DNA of 52,747 nucleotides, from contig JAHLWZ010000595.1 of assembly GCA_020536535.1 (NCBI GenBank), forward strand, positions 1-52,747. Direction: 5' to 3'. The position numbers were made by a program, and so were the translations under genes. The first letter of the stretch is position 1. The number at the start of each line of letters is the position of its first letter. Of the stretch, positions 42,601-50,227 are shown piece after piece. This DNA is from Pelomyxa schiedti. Its lineage: Eukaryota; Protista; Evosea. The notes under the pieces were generated by a model. The model searched no databases. It was not told the DNA's origin and saw only the letters and a program-made list of their open reading frames with translations.

Positions 42601-42721
42601 CTCCAACACCAAACACCACAACCAAAAAAAGAGAAACAAGCCTTCTCTTAAATGCCCAATGTGGCACAACCGTAACCAGTTTCTTTTTTCTTTACAACTG
42701 CCTCTCATAAAACTAATTCGT

Positions 42722-44056
42722 TTAGGCTAGAAACGAGAGTATCAGGACTAGAACAGGTTTGGGTACAGAGAGGATAATTGAGGTAGAACCCAGTCGTGGG
42801 TGATGACCACATAGAATGGCCATCTTTTTCTGAATGTATTTCTGTGGGATTGTTTGTGAGATTAAGAGGGAGCACATAGAAAGGTACCCTGGAATTACGG
42901 AGTAACACCATGACTGAAGGCGGCACATGTGGTTTGAGGCCTTTTAGTGATTTGAGATCCATGCCGTACACTTCAACAAGCATCACTGCAGTTTTGGCGC
43001 TTCCAAAACAGGCCGCGGAGCCAAGAGCACCACTATGGTGAAGCATGTATTCGGCCGCAGAGGGTTCATTCTGAGTATAGGCACTTTGTACCACCCGGAA
43101 AATTGTGTCCTCTGAGAAGTCGATTCGGACTGTGCGCTCGATTACCTCTGCAGAAACTCTGGCCCCGGCATCAAGTAGCATGTTTATAATTCGCTCGTTA
43201 TTGGAACTGTAGACGTGAAGAGCAGTTTGCAAGGTTAAATCCCAATCTCTGGAGAATAAGGTGTAAGAGCGGACAAAAAAAGGAGGGCAATACCCTACAC
43301 ATCCCTTCAGATTCGGATCTGCTCCGAGCTTCAGGAGTACTGCAACAATGCGTTCACTACCCTTGACTATAAATCAGTAAGCTGGGACAGAAAGAGGAAA
43401 AAAATAGCAAAGAAAAAAAACCAATGTATAAATGAAGATAGGAGAAAAACCCTCCAACAAGAGTAGTGCAACGGAGTCCCCGCGGTGCTGGTTTGATTGA
43501 CATTGGCCCCGCGCGCAACTAGAATCTCGATAAGGCGTATTCCCACAGACACAAGAAGATCATTCTCGCTCTTGGTTCTGGAATACGAGTTGCGGCATGC
43601 AGTCAACAAAGGTGTGTCTGGAGAGCACACGCAAGGGTCATTACATCCAGCACCAAATTCCAGTAGGCACTTCACCACATCAATCCTGGTCTCCAACTCC
43701 TCACCCCCCAAAGGGTAGCCGCCGCGGGGATTATGGGAAGTCGACTTCGGAGCGAGACAGCACAGCAGCGCCAAATGCAGGGGCCGGCACGGCCCGGCGA
43801 CGTCTCCCCACCAAGTCGGCTCCCTAGAGTCCTCGACGGCGCCCGACGCCAAGTTGATCTCTGGGTATTGCCCACGCGGCGGCACCGAGAGGTTCACGAA
43901 GTGGGCGCTCAAATTGTGGGACGACGATGCCGACGAGGAGGAGTCGCCAACCACGACGCCGATAAGTTGCCTCAGTCCCGCGCAGTCTCCAGCCACAATT
44001 CGGGAGCCCAAAAGGGCCCCCATTGACGCAGGGAACTGGGGCGTTTCGTCCGTCAT
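42722..44056 (-). CDS. Ankyrin-repeat protein with a C-terminal F-box-like motif on the last exon
   Basis: DTPLLTAC..LIEILVARGANVNQTSTAGTPLHYSC, LLKLGADPN, QTALH..MLLDAGA. Intron 42887-42842; last exon KYIQKKMAILCGHHPRLGSTSIILSVPKPVLVLILSFLA*. Confidence 0.82.
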
Positions 44057-44548
44057 CAAGTATACTTCCTTTCTGATGACGGTGGGAAAGGTTTCTTGGC
44101 AGTGGAATCCCACCGACGCGCATTCTTGGGCGAAGCCACCAGTGCGTCTCGATTCAGGCACCAGACCTGGAAATGCTTGTACAAGCACAAATCGTGCTCT
44201 CCGACAGAGGGAAATATTTCGTTCCGTTGAACTTCATTACCATTCGTGCACGCCAGACATTTAAGGAACGTGAGAGGTGGAAATCGGCTTTGAAGGGAAC
44301 CTTTTTCCCCGGGTTTAGTGCAAAACTTAAGTTTCTTCCCGGCGTTGGAGGGGGAAACGACCTGCAACCGAAATATTTCGCTTTGACAGGTCTCGGCTTT
44401 ATAAACCATGACGGTACCGCATTAAATAAAACAAAACTCAAAGCCCAAAGGTACAAACACTCCTCAACTGTTCTTTTTTTCTCCTCACCTAGTTTCTCCA
44501 GAACAAGCCAACACATAGCCGGTAGAATCAACCTACAACTTATTAGAA

Positions 44549-46021
44549 ATGGCACAGTGCCCAAGTCCAATTGTGAACGAGAACATACTCGCTGCTGAGC
44601 ACAAGGAAAGCCTCCGCAAGGTCTGCGAATTGCTCGACATGAATACCCCTCTGGCTTCCACTGCAGCCCGTTTGGCTCTGTCAGGCATGAATGTCTCTGA
44701 CTTGACTGATGACTCGTTGGCAAAGTATCTCTCCCCGCTATTTTAGAGAGTTGGTACTCATCCCGTCGTTTAGATACATACACGACCGGCTGGAGGAGAG
44801 AATCACAAATCGAGCAGCAAAGGCGGCCTTGTACTCATCAAAGCGGAAATCGGCCAACCAGCTCGAGCTGTACGCTTATGCATTCCAGTCATTGCCGTAC
44901 ATCACAGGTAATAACTCATTCCCTAGCAAACTGGCTCATTTTGCAAAGCTATATCAAGTCTCTTGAGTGAAGCTGTTACATCTTACATTGAGCCGGGAGA
45001 TACACACTTCACTCTGATTGACATCGGTATTGGAACAGGAGCACAAGAAAGAGCGATAATCTCTCACATTGCATCACTGCCTCTTGGTCATGAATTGAGC
45101 TCGATACACATAGTAGGAATAGATCTATGTGAAGGTTCTCTTCGGTCAGCTGGGAACAGTTGCGTAGAGGCCGGAAGAATCGCTGGCGTTCAGGTGACAT
45201 ATTCCTCAGTATGCGGATTTGCCGAAACTCTCACAACTGAGAAATGGGAAGGAATCCTGTCCTCTGCTAATCAAGAGGTAGAGATAACTCTTTGTGGGTA
45301 AATAAGTCTTACCTTGATTCAGAGGAGCAGAGTAGTTGTGATGGCTTCACTGGCGATGCATCACTTGCTACCTGAGAAAAGAAGTGATTTACTCCGGACA
45401 CTGAAGACAGTGAAGTCGATGGGTGGAGTAAGTGGCGTAGTACTTGCAGAACCGCATCTGAATCATGCAGACAATAAGATTGCTGCAAGATTCGAAAGCA
45501 GTTGGAATCACTTTCAACTGGTTTGGGAGCTCATTGACTCACTCGATTATACTCACAAAGTACGACCATTCACTTTTCATCCCTGCATGCTGGCTTAATC
45601 ACCACAGGAAAAATTCCATGTCAAACAGTTTTTCCTGCGAGAGTTGGATGATGTATTTGCTAACTCTGACGAGATAAGAACTGAGCGTGAGACCGAAATG
45701 CAAACGTGGGTTGATCTGCTTGCTTGTTGTGGTTATTCCACACACCCTCTCTCCAGATCAGAGGCAGTCCCCTGGTAATTTCTAAGCCCTTGAAAAAAAT
45801 CTTGCCATGACTCTTACATAATATTCAGTTCTGGTGGAGTGGAAATTGTACCACATGGAGAATGGCTAGGAATTGACTGGAAAGGTGTAACGCTGATTGG
45901 GATACTATCATTTATACCACAGTGTGAGGAGAGTGAAGGGCCGAGCAAAAACAGAGTCCCTGAGAGGTACTGCACGCCGTCGGAGGAGACTTACTCCACA
46001 CAGAGCTGGTCACTAGCCTGA
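44549..46021 (+). CDS. Stand-alone GRAS-domain (Rossmann methyltransferase-like) protein of bacterial type, 6 exons, 411 aa
   Basis: Exons 44549-44724, 44774-44907, 44949-45277, 45323-45559, 45608-45774, 45829-46021 total 1236 nt in frame, all GT-AG. Motifs in GRAS order: QSLPYI..SEAV; FTLIDIGIGTGAQ (VHIID equivalent); IHIVGID; VVMASLAMHHL; VVLAEPHLNH..RFESSWNHFQLVWELID (PFYRE equivalent); FFLRELDDVF..RTERET..WVDLLACCGY; LGIDWKGVTLIGILSF (SAW equivalent). Confidence 0.88.
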
Positions 46022-47312: not shown

Positions 47313-50227
47313 TTATCTGCCCTTCAACTCTTGGATGCTTTTTTTGCTTTCAACAAAATTGAATCCTCCTTGCTGAAAATTTCCTGTTGAAGGAGTTGGC
47401 AGGAGATAGTAAGACCAGGGATTTGCCTTGGATAGTTTTTCGACTTGTTTTCGCTTGGCTTCTTGTTCCTTGGGAGTCAAGGGCTCTAGACTACAAAGGT
47501 GTTAAAAGTAAACCATTGTAATTATCTGTCACTTACGGTTTGTTAGTGGGTTCTGCAGCAAGGCTTCTATCATAAGCCTGATCAGAGGTAAGACATGTGT
47601 TCGCAGAATCTTGAAGGTACTTCGTGTAGCTTGGTACGGAGGTGAAGGAGTGAGGTTGCATCTGGAATTGTTGAATTGCTCTGTGGTTTGGTTATAAGAG
47701 AAACATGTGGCATTGTGTTCGTACTTGATGACATTTGATAGATTTCGATACTTGACGAAATTTATCAATGTCGTGTCCGGCACAGTATTTGGGTTGCCAT
47801 CACAAACAAAAACTACGTCTGTGAGAAATACACCTTCAACGACGTGAGAAGATAAAATTCTGACACTTTTGAACCTAGATAAGGAATACACGGCGGTACG
47901 GCGAACTTCAGAGTCTCGCGATACACTGAAAAGTTGCCTTTTGGATCAAAAAGCTGTGTATACTTATCATAAAGATCCCAGGTAGAACCCGGAAGCAGCT
48001 GTACACTGTTAAACTGGCTAGTAAGTAAGGACTGGATACCTCCCAAGAAGATCTTAATCTGTGAACTGCCGAATTTTGGAGTGCAGATATTATTTCCATA
48101 ACGGCATTATAGTTGCGGAGAGCAAAACAAGCCTTGGTATTGGTAGAATTAGAACCCTGGAAATTTGTTTTGCCGTTACATCTGCAGTGAGGATAAGTCT
48201 ATGTAAGAGAATGGCTCGGTCTCTGATGTTATCATGCCGAACAATCTCAGTGATGGCCCACATTGTCCTCTAGTAGTTGAAAAAGTCATTAAGTAAAAAA
48301 TGAGAGGTGCATAAGATACTTTATTTGATTCAAGCACCATTCGGGATATATTTGGTGCTAATTTGTCTTTTACAGCCTGCTTGTTCCAGGCCTGTCCAAT
48401 GAATTCTTTTGTGGTTTTTATTTGAGTAGGTACTTTGGAAGCTGAGGAAAAAACCTTTCGGCCGAATTTTGGACCATAATTCCCACTCTAGGAGAGTAAT
48501 CTGCCTTGCTAGTTCTTCTGGGTGGAAATCCAGCATAGAGGACACGGTTCCGTAATCCATAAGATGTATCGGTGGAGGTGGCTCCCCAAGGGGGTTTGAT
48601 ACCCAGTCTCGAACCTGATAGACTACATTTAGGCATTACAAAATGGCAAAGAACCAACTCGCTCCAAATTTTTCAGCACAATCAGAGCCACTTTGCAAGA
48701 TTCTGAAAATACTTTCAGGATTTGGGAAGCAAGTCTTAGGAGATCCAAGTTCTCCTTGAAGTCGTACTGATACATGGAAGTCCATGTCTTCAGGAGATTA
48801 ACCACCCTTTTGAAAATGAGAAGAGAAAATCCTATTAGAACTACTTTAAACGTATTCTTTGTTTCATATCACTGAATTGTGTGGCATCTACCCAAGAAGG
48901 TTTTCTCATGAAAAATCTGGAATCATTGTCAAACATAAACTGAACACCAAGAAAGTTACCTTGCCACGAGTATTTCAAGGAGCTCTGGCCCTGTCGTGAA
49001 CGCAGAGTAGCAAATAAGGAAAGAGTGCATAAAATCCATGTCTACATTTCAAAGTGAATAGTTCCCTCACCCTGGATAGGCAGAACCAACCACTTTCTTC
49101 AGGATGTGTGAGGTATTGGATTAACTTGTAAATTGTCCCTCCACGTATCATGATATCACGGGAACCAGGAGCAAGCTGTTTTTGTTTGTTTTTTTAATGT
49201 AATATAATTGATCAATTTCTCTGACGGGTTTCAAAGATTGGTTGTACTGGGGCAGACCTGTGTGGCCAGCTCAATTGGAACACGCATCCATCTTACATTG
49301 TCTTCACCATCGGGTTGTTCAAAGCTTGGGTAATGTTTTAAACATTGTACAGCCCAATCCGGAGGAGGCTCATTTGGTTCATTTTCATACTTTCATCGAA
49401 AGTATTAGGTACGATTTGCAAAGCAAAGAACTCACAGAAATTGGCTCATCACCGACATTCTTTGGAAGAGGAAGAAGCTCCAGAGGATCTGAAGATTTCT
49501 GAGAAATTGATTAGAAAAAATTGGAATATAGGTTGCCCACCTTGAGGTCAGGCTTGAGAGGTGAGCTTTGCGTGAATAGTGACACATCAGCACCAAGTAA
49601 CTTGTTGGCCTTGGAATGTATGGGTGAGTCGGTTGTACAACTTCGGGGACGGCTCATAGTAGTGTTTGTTTTGACCGCCGAGGATGCTGAGACGGAAAGT
49701 TCACTATTAACGGCTGCAGAACATTTGGTGTCAGCTGTAATGGGTGTGGTTGATTCAAAGGAAGCACTGCCACTGCTGCTTGATGAAGAACTAGAAGATC
49801 CTGAAGAAACGCCCCCTGAACTTGCTGCACTGTTCTCAGTGTACACAGTATTGCAGTTGGAGGGAAGAGGTGTAGAGACAGACATTGGTGGGGGTGGAGG
49901 AGGAGAAGGAGAAGTAGATTTGTGATAGCCCGGTGACGAAGGGGGAGTCTCAGAGTCGGGGAGAGGTGGGGGTGGTGGTGGGGGGGATGGATCTTCATGT
50001 CTGTGTGTGTGCGGGTGGGCATGGGAGTGGTGAGAGTGGTGGTGGTGAGAGTGAGTGGAATGTGAAGAGTGCAGAGATGAACTCTGTGCATTTCCATGCA
50101 TTTGTGATGACTTGACGCTAATGACTCCCTGACTGCTGCTGCGAACGCGCCCTGGCATTCCAAGGGACGGGTCACCCGAACATGGCTCGGGACTTACAAC
50201 AATTGCAGGATATGACATGTGGTGCAT
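47313..50227 (-). CDS. Ras guanine nucleotide exchange factor (REM + CDC25 domains) with a Pro/Ser/His-rich N-terminus; 5' end uncertain
   Basis: IRGGTIYKLIQYLT..FLICYSAFTTGPELL (REM); PEELARQITLLEW, NYNAVMEIISALQNSAVHRLRSSW, PPCIPYLGVFLTDVVFVCDGNP, LINFVK (CDC25). Confidence 0.92.

What the first reader, a model, noticed from the sequence alone, without database searches (positions are those of the whole stretch)
44549..46021. Intron-containing bacterial-type GRAS gene in a non-plant eukaryote
Seen: six GT-AG exons give a 411-aa protein with every GRAS block in order, no plant-type disordered or DELLA N-terminus, and an intact DIGIGTG glycine loop plus the GID acidic residue after strand 2. 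Established: GRAS proteins (DELLA, SCR, SHR, NSP1/2) are treated as plant-lineage regulators acquired from bacteria; bacterial GRAS proteins keep the Rossmann SAM-binding motif that plant ones have degraded. Inference: an independent bacterium-to-protist transfer, domesticated with five host-style introns. It may be an active small-molecule methyltransferase or a ligand sensor, i.e. a GRAS system outside plants. This is my best candidate for an undescribed system in the window.
Basis: partly seen in the sequence, partly recalled or inferred. Interest (0 to 1): 0.9.

Follow-up and report, generated by a model that had tools for sequence, protein, structure and literature searches.

The report
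Prokaryote-type GRAS gene in an amoeba
The anaerobic amoeba Pelomyxa schiedti has a real, spliced, twice-present gene for a GRAS protein, a family usually called plant-specific; it came from prokaryotes separately from the plant genes and still looks like a small-molecule methylating enzyme rather than a gene regulator.

Summary
Observation confirmed. Six exons with five GT-AG introns (41-54 nt) give 411 aa. The GenBank proteins of this gene and of a second copy on scaffold C4 (both auto-named 'GAI protein', Pelomyxa schiedti) match my models at all five junctions. The two copies are under strong purifying selection (dN/dS about 0.09). Pfam GRAS scores 76 bits; the predicted fold matches plant GRAS at Z 34-37 against 18 or less for methyltransferases. 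The protein is prokaryote-type: a prokaryote-only profile scores 228 bits, a plant-only one 66. Plants nest with a myxobacterial subgroup (100/99) that excludes Pelomyxa, and a plant+Pelomyxa clade is rejected (AU p=0.005). So the acquisition was independent; the donor is unresolved. SAM motifs (GxGxG, D162, E196) and a His-His pair are kept. The nearest non-GRAS folds include metal-dependent carboxylate methyltransferases (CysG/BelI), and prokaryotic GRAS genes recur beside amino-acid/2-oxo-acid enzymes. Best guess: a SAM- and metal-dependent small-acid methyltransferase (about 50%); a ligand sensor about 25%. No activity or RNA evidence was obtained. No paper on it was found. The scan had already noted the other copy (s1-377886).

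The parts
44205..44548 (+). Upstream region duplicated with the gene (about 85% identical in the C4 copy); TATA-like words at 44400 and 44423
   Evidence: promoter role is inference
44549..44724 (+). Exon 1 (codons 1-59): cap helices; GenBank model of this copy starts later, at Met47
44725..44773 (+). Intron 1, 49 nt, GT-AG, phase 2
44774..44907 (+). Exon 2: cap helix 3 and linker with invariant Y79 and Q88
44908..44948 (+). Intron 2, 41 nt, GT-AG, phase 1
44949..45277 (+). Exon 3: Rossmann strands 1-3 (VHIID/LHRII region)
45020..45040 (+). SAM motif I, D128-x-G130-x-G132-x-G134
45122..45124 (+). D162, acid at the end of strand 2 (ribose-binding position)
45278..45322 (+). Intron 3, 45 nt, GT-AG, phase 0, holds an in-frame stop
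45323..45559 (+). Exon 4: strands 4-5 and helix 10, with H226-H227, E256, H261, H276
45359..45364 (+). H226-H227 pair after strand 4: candidate catalytic or metal-binding residues
   Evidence: equivalence inferred
45560..45607 (+). Intron 4, 48 nt, GT-AG, phase 0, holds an in-frame stop
45608..45774 (+). Exon 5: K298, R303, E304, D307, R316, E318, W326
45775..45828 (+). Intron 5, 54 nt, GT-AG, phase 2
45829..46021 (+). Exon 6: last strands, a 30-aa low-confidence tail absent from prokaryotic kin, and the stop codon

Best explanation
A GRAS gene entered the Pelomyxa lineage from a prokaryote long ago, separately from the transfer that gave plants their GRAS genes. It gained five host-type introns, diverged far, and was recently duplicated as a 2-kb block; both copies are maintained. 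SHOWN: gene structure, GRAS fold, prokaryote-type sequence, purifying selection, non-monophyly with plants. INFERRED: the protein is a soluble enzyme. SAM binds at the Rossmann core (G130/G132/G134, D162, E196). H226-H227 plus a later acid (D307 or E304) hold a divalent metal or act as the base. A small carboxylic, 2-oxo or amino acid enters the cavity under the helical cap and is methylated. The substrate has probably drifted from the prokaryotic one, since N110, P163, N272, H320 and E321 are changed.
For: 35 of 48 positions conserved at 85% or more in prokaryotic GRAS are kept, against 26 of 180 poorly conserved positions. GxGxG + acid162 + HH occur together in Pelomyxa, in 51/51 pattern-found and 14/15 HMM-found prokaryotic GRAS, and in 0/30 plant GRAS. 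Profile alignment with O-methyltransferases puts the glycine loop on their motif I and H226-H227 on their LH-D motif (weak, E 0.0015). The best non-GRAS folds include CysG/BelI (Z 17.7-18.0, rmsd 2.8-3.0, about 212 aligned), tied with MM_2633, EgtD and CmoA; AprA, SxtA and SgvM follow. CysG/BelI use a His-His-Asp Ca2+ site to methylate 3-isopropylmalate-type acids (PMC11408123). D307 is Asp in 98% of the prokaryotic set and Asn in all sampled plants. Prokaryotic GRAS genes lie next to three unrelated enzyme families that interconvert amino acids and 2-oxo acids: a HisC-like aminotransferase (25 Bacteroidota loci, a Streptomyces fusion, 3 myxobacteria), a Glu/Leu/Phe/Val dehydrogenase (2 cyanobacteria) and an FMN glutamate-synthase-like protein (5 loci). 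None of the 13 amino-acid differences between the copies touches a conserved position; pN 0.016, pS 0.164, p 3e-19. Tree and AU test.
Against: No GRAS protein has been shown to methylate anything (own knowledge); plant GRAS did not bind SAM or SAH in ITC (PMC5873383), and no prokaryotic GRAS structure is in the PDB copy. Several near kin (Methanoperedens L004, Myxococcaceae L005, Skermanella) sit next to sensor kinases instead, and others are fused to CBS domains. Pelomyxa has no close partner aminotransferase (best 27%, E 1e-4). 13 of the 48 conserved positions are lost. The top non-GRAS folds are tied within about 1 Z unit, so they do not single out a substrate.
Confidence: 0.5

Rival explanations
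1. Same origin, but the protein is a non-catalytic sensor: it binds SAM/SAH or an amino-acid metabolite in the capped cavity and passes the signal on by protein contact, for example to a kinase.
For: Sensor histidine kinases lie within 1 kb in 8 of 76 prokaryotic loci, including L004 and L005, and in Skermanella. CBS and TerB fusions exist. Neighbouring amino-acid enzymes could be regulated targets rather than pathway partners. Pelomyxa has at least two HisKA matches. Plant GRAS turned into interaction hubs (PMC5873383).
Against: Kinases are common neighbours anywhere, vary in orientation, and were not tested against a background rate. The His-His-acid set is kept, which suits catalysis.
Confidence: 0.25
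2. It has converged on the plant role: a nuclear transcription co-regulator or scaffold without ligand chemistry.
For: Full GRAS cap and core fold, a small basic patch K82-R83-K84, and a new flexible tail.
Against: The SAM motifs that plants lost are all kept; only 19 of 56 plant-conserved positions are matched; there is no N-terminal activation region; two near-identical copies rather than a family; pI 5.3.
Confidence: 0.1
3. The gene came from a plant or alga, or shares one eukaryotic origin with plant GRAS.
For: W365 matches the plant residue, and 4 of 20 diagnostic columns are plant-like. With sparse sampling the AU test did not reject it (p 0.37). The Pelomyxa branch is very long (2.5 changes per column).
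Against: Once plant-proximal myxobacteria were added, plant+Pelomyxa monophyly was rejected (p 0.005). 12 of 20 diagnostic columns are bacterial-like. Profile scores are 228 versus 66 bits. All sequence hits were prokaryotic-type GRAS or the gene itself. No algal GRAS was in the tree.
Confidence: 0.05
4. Artefact: a pseudogene, a wrong gene model, or DNA of a prokaryote or another protist in the culture.
For: The culture was polyxenic and polyeukaryotic and the DNA was whole-genome amplified (PMC8887013). No RNA reads were checked.
Against: Five spliceosomal introns; neighbours are ankyrin, RasGEF and RasGAP genes; the second copy is on a 467-kb scaffold; exon GC is 47.8% against a genome GC of 46.5%; indels between the copies fall only outside exons; strong purifying selection.
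Confidence: 0.04

Closest known systems
Prokaryotic GRAS family proteins (PF03514; Zhang, Iyer and Aravind 2012, known to me from memory and as cited in PMC9474926)
   Same: Stand-alone GRAS domain of about 365 aa; GxGxG loop, acid after strand 2, ALHH-type motif, EP-x-x-x-H, K-x-FF-x-RE-x-x-D; nested among Myxococcota, Gemmatimonadota, Actinomycetota and Methanoperedens sequences (100/97).
   Different: Nuclear gene with five introns; at most about 28% identity; 13 of 48 conserved positions changed; extra C-terminal tail; no operon partner.
Plant GRAS regulators (SCL3, RGA/DELLA, SCL7, SHR-SCR)
   Same: Cap plus alpha/beta core fold, Z 34-37, rmsd 2.4-3.0 over about 345 residues.
   Different: No variable N-terminus or DELLA motif; SAM motifs intact; D307 instead of Asn; no SAW tryptophan; intron-rich, whereas plant genes are mostly single-exon (PMC5332381); separate origin.
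CysG/BelI His-His-Asp metal-dependent carboxyl O-methyltransferases (PMC11408123) and related class I enzymes (MM_2633, CmoA, EgtD, AprA/SxtA MT, SgvM/MppJ)
   Same: Seven-strand SAM fold, Z 16-18; same order of Gly loop, ribose acid, adenine acid and His-His after strand 4.
   Different: They lack the GRAS cap and the extra strand-helix-strand segment; 13-16% identity; the third metal ligand is not confirmed here.

Membership tests
GRAS family (PF03514) | Profile score over the curated cut-off | tested here: met
   76.1 bits against 27, E 3e-21
GRAS family (PF03514) | Helical cap plus Rossmann core with the GRAS-specific extra segment | tested here: met
   AF2 pLDDT 86.6; Z 34-37 to four plant GRAS over residues 9-380, next fold Z 18
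Prokaryote-type GRAS | Intact SAM motifs (GxGxG, acid after strand 2, acid after strand 3, HH after strand 4) | tested here: met
Prokaryote-type GRAS | Groups with prokaryotic sequences, not with plants | tested here: met
   100/97 clade of 21 prokaryotic rows plus Pelomyxa; AU p 0.005 against plant+Pelomyxa. Exact sister unresolved.
Plant GRAS / DELLA (GAI) | DELLA/TVHYNP or long disordered N-terminal region | tested here: not met
   Ordered helix from residue 11; no PF12041 hit. The GenBank name 'GAI protein' is a misnomer.
Plant GRAS / DELLA (GAI) | Monophyly with plant GRAS | tested here: not met
Plant GRAS / DELLA (GAI) | Nuclear transcription co-regulation, dimer formation | not testable with these tools
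   needs localisation and interaction assays
Class I SAM-dependent methyltransferase (active) | Fold and SAM-binding motifs | tested here: met
Class I SAM-dependent methyltransferase (active) | SAM binding and methyl transfer | not testable with these tools
   no assay exists for any GRAS that I could find
CysG/BelI-type HHD methyltransferase | His-His-Asp triad in metal-binding geometry | tested here: inconclusive
   H226-H227 present at the matching place; D307/E304 are candidates; distances could not be measured

The most novel reading that the evidence does not exclude
This is the only GRAS known from a eukaryote outside plants and their algal kin: a second, independent domestication that kept the ancestral chemistry, with prokaryote-type GRAS being His-His-Asp metal-dependent methyltransferases of amino-acid-derived acids. 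Plant GRAS regulators would then be pseudo-enzymes that lost a definable metal/SAM site (Asp to Asn at 307, loss of the glycine loop), and their empty cavity would have a traceable ancestral ligand.
Probability: 0.3. Interest if true: 0.8.

Novelty: new member of a known kind. Interest (0 to 1): 0.55.

Why it matters
GRAS proteins control gibberellin response, root patterning and symbiosis, and are described as plant-specific products of one transfer from bacteria (PMC12448838, PMC5873383). A maintained, intron-bearing GRAS in an amoebozoan shows a second entry into eukaryotes with a different outcome: the enzyme-like site was kept and no regulatory N-terminus was added. The residues that survive in it after very long divergence pick out the likely active site, giving a concrete test of the long-standing, untested prediction that ancestral GRAS proteins are methyltransferases. 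The limit: that test can be done as well on the prokaryotic proteins, and prokaryote-to-anaerobic-protist transfers are common.

Tried and rejected
The joined gene model was not sent to any search tool. Searches went exon by exon by reference and then used the collection's own proteins P0001 and P0015. The joined translation was built from coordinates only inside scripts, to check frame and length, compare the two copies and compare with those proteins. Zhang 2012, Hirano 2017 and Li 2016 are not held. No paper holds both Pelomyxa and GRAS, and the genome paper's supplement has no mention. No other eukaryotic prokaryote-type GRAS appeared; these searches are insensitive at 25% identity, so absence is not shown. 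No viral GRAS. No further GRAS in 400 genomes of the Methanoperedens phylum or 400 of the actinomycete phylum, so a methanogen-endosymbiont donor has no support. The first AU test was inconclusive (p 0.37) until plant-proximal bacteria were added. An allele explanation for the C4 copy was rejected: homology is limited to about 2 kb and the flanks differ. My idea that E256 and E318 equal the catalytic glutamates of COMT-type enzymes was not confirmed: profile alignment was reliable only up to just past H226-H227. The look-up of encoding contigs returned nothing for the Pelomyxa proteins.

Full report
Gene structure. The sequence gives six exons (44549-44724, 44774-44907, 44949-45277, 45323-45559, 45608-45774, 45829-46021) and five GT-AG introns of 49, 41, 45, 48 and 54 nt, encoding 411 aa without an internal stop. 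Searched separately, exons 3, 4 and 5 hit consecutive parts of Pfam GRAS. An exon-3 search of 1.84 billion representatives returned one identical protein, P0001. It is KAH3760657.1, 'GAI protein [Pelomyxa schiedti]', with cluster mate KAH3768014.1 (P0015, 411 aa). P0001 equals residues 47-411 of my model and P0015 equals my model of the second copy, so the deposited annotation agrees at all five junctions. The genome size and contig count (52.4 Mb, 5337) match the P. schiedti assembly, which has about 7.4 introns per gene, 98% of them GT-AG (PMC8887013). The joined model was not sent to search tools; the collection's own protein ids were used instead. RNA reads could not be checked.

A real, maintained host gene. 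The genome has exactly two copies by both the Pfam and the prokaryote-type profile. They share about 2 kb (92% identity) with different flanks, so this is a block duplication. Exons differ by 62 substitutions and no indel; introns and flanks carry indels. There are 47 synonymous and 15 non-synonymous changes (pS 0.164, pN 0.016, Fisher p 3e-19). Five of the 13 changed residues lie in the 30-residue tail and none at a position conserved in prokaryotes. The first 46 codons are open in both copies, carry mostly synonymous changes and fold into cap helices that align with plant GRAS from residue 9, so the 411-aa start is better than GenBank's Met47 for this copy. Neighbours are ankyrin, RasGEF and RasGAP genes.

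Family. P0001 scores 76 bits on PF03514, with the best methyltransferase family at E 0.06. The AlphaFold model (pLDDT 86.6, pTM 0.86) matches SCL3, RGA, SCL7 and SHR at Z 34-37, and the next folds, all class I methyltransferases, at Z 18 or less. Atlas neighbours are bacterial GRAS clusters first (0.95-0.96) and plant clusters later (0.88). It is a GRAS protein but not a DELLA/GAI.

Origin. I gathered 76 prokaryotic loci by pattern, 15 more from Myxococcota by profile, and plant genes from metagenome contigs (subfamily labels are my motif-based guesses; SHR, HAM, NSP and algal genes are missing). A prokaryote-only profile scores the Pelomyxa protein 228 bits and a plant-only profile 66; of 20 diagnostic columns 12 are bacterial-like, 4 plant-like and 4 neither. 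The first careful tree placed it among prokaryotes (95/84, 98/89), but the AU test did not reject union with plants (p 0.37). Four myxobacterial proteins (L229-L232) then proved plant-proximal: they score higher on the plant profile and group with plants at 100/99, in line with the published single transfer from one bacterial subgroup (PMC12448838). In this 55-row tree (the long rows P0010, L070 and P0060 were left out) Pelomyxa lies in a 100/97 clade of 21 prokaryotic rows, and plant+Pelomyxa monophyly is rejected (p 0.005). Either still needs a separate entry into eukaryotes or an unusual history of losses. The branch is very long (2.5), so the transfer is old or evolution was fast; no donor can be named.

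Active site. Despite at most about 28% identity, 35 of 48 highly conserved prokaryotic positions are kept, against 26 of 180 variable ones. These include D128, G130, G132, G134, Q136, D162, E196, H226, H227, E256, H261, H276, K298, R303, E304, D307, R316, E318 and W326. GxGxG, acid 162 and His-His occur together in Pelomyxa, in 51/51 of the pattern-found set (circular for the glycine loop), in 14/15 of the profile-found set (not selected by that pattern) and in 0/30 plants. Plant GRAS lack these motifs and bound neither SAM nor SAH (PMC5873383). A weak profile alignment to O-methyltransferases (E 0.0015) places the loop on motif I and H226-H227 on the LH-D motif after strand 4. Among the nearest non-GRAS folds are CysG and BelI (Z about 18, rmsd 2.8-3.0), tied with MM_2633, EgtD and CmoA. 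CysG and BelI bind SAM through a Gly, a ribose Asp and an adenine Asp, and methylate small malate-type acids using a His-His-Asp calcium site (PMC11408123). The same order of residues is present here. D307, Asp in most prokaryotic GRAS and Asn in all sampled plants and in the four plant-proximal bacteria, is my candidate third ligand; this is inference, not measured. Changed positions (N110S, P163L, N272S, H320E, E321T) suggest a shifted substrate.

Context of relatives. A HisC-like PLP aminotransferase lies directly beside GRAS in 25 Bacteroidota loci (kin, so not independent), is fused to it in Streptomyces, and adjoins it in three plant-proximal myxobacteria. A Glu/Leu/Phe/Val dehydrogenase follows it in two cyanobacteria and an FMN glutamate-synthase-like gene flanks it in five Melainabacteria/cyanobacterial loci. 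Three unrelated enzyme families thus point to amino-acid/2-oxo-acid chemistry. Sensor kinases are adjacent in 8 of 76 loci and in Skermanella, and CBS fusions occur, which supports the sensor rival. Pelomyxa did not take a close partner aminotransferase along.

Verdict. Shown: a genuine, selected, intron-bearing prokaryote-type GRAS gene in an archamoeba, not monophyletic with plant GRAS. Inferred: SAM binding (about 70%) and methyl transfer to a small acid (about 50%). I found no paper describing a GRAS outside plants, their algal kin and prokaryotes, though the library is incomplete and GenBank's automatic name already records the family match. The scan had noted the other copy (s1-377886) with a similar reading, which is not independent support. 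New member of a known kind; interest 0.55.

Noticed in passing
L229, L230, L231, L232 (Myxococcota genomes G646, G552, G797, G577): Plant-proximal bacterial GRAS: higher score on a plant profile than on the bacterial one, sister to plants at 100/99, keep GxGxG and His-His but have the plant Asn at position 307; three lie beside an aminotransferase. Good candidates for the plant donor lineage.
   Followed up: partly
L013:7094-8584 and P0013 / L239: In Leptothoe-like cyanobacteria GRAS lies in a cluster with an amino-acid dehydrogenase and a multi-core peptide precursor (repeated GG-leader cores ending in NHNE, DUF5836); in P0013 the precursor repeats are fused in frame to GRAS. GRAS might tailor a RiPP there.
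   Followed up: partly
window 44549-44686: The GenBank model KAH3760657.1 starts at Met47 and drops two cap helices; the paralog's model has the full 411 aa.
   Followed up: yes
L004 / L204:8001-9122: An archaeal GRAS (Candidatus Methanoperedens) in a cluster of PAS/GAF sensor kinases; none found in 400 other genomes of that phylum.
   Followed up: partly
L236:6719-7837: GRAS on Skermanella plasmids, tail to tail with a PAS kinase and a response regulator, the same arrangement as in Methanoperedens.
   Followed up: no
window 42705-44188 (minus) and 47529-48657 (minus): Flanking host genes: an ankyrin-repeat gene divergent from GRAS and a multi-exon RasGEF gene downstream; no sign of functional linkage.
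   Followed up: partly
G000:C3602:8-187 and G000:C920:11862-12041: Two histidine-kinase (HisKA) matches in the Pelomyxa genome.
   Followed up: no
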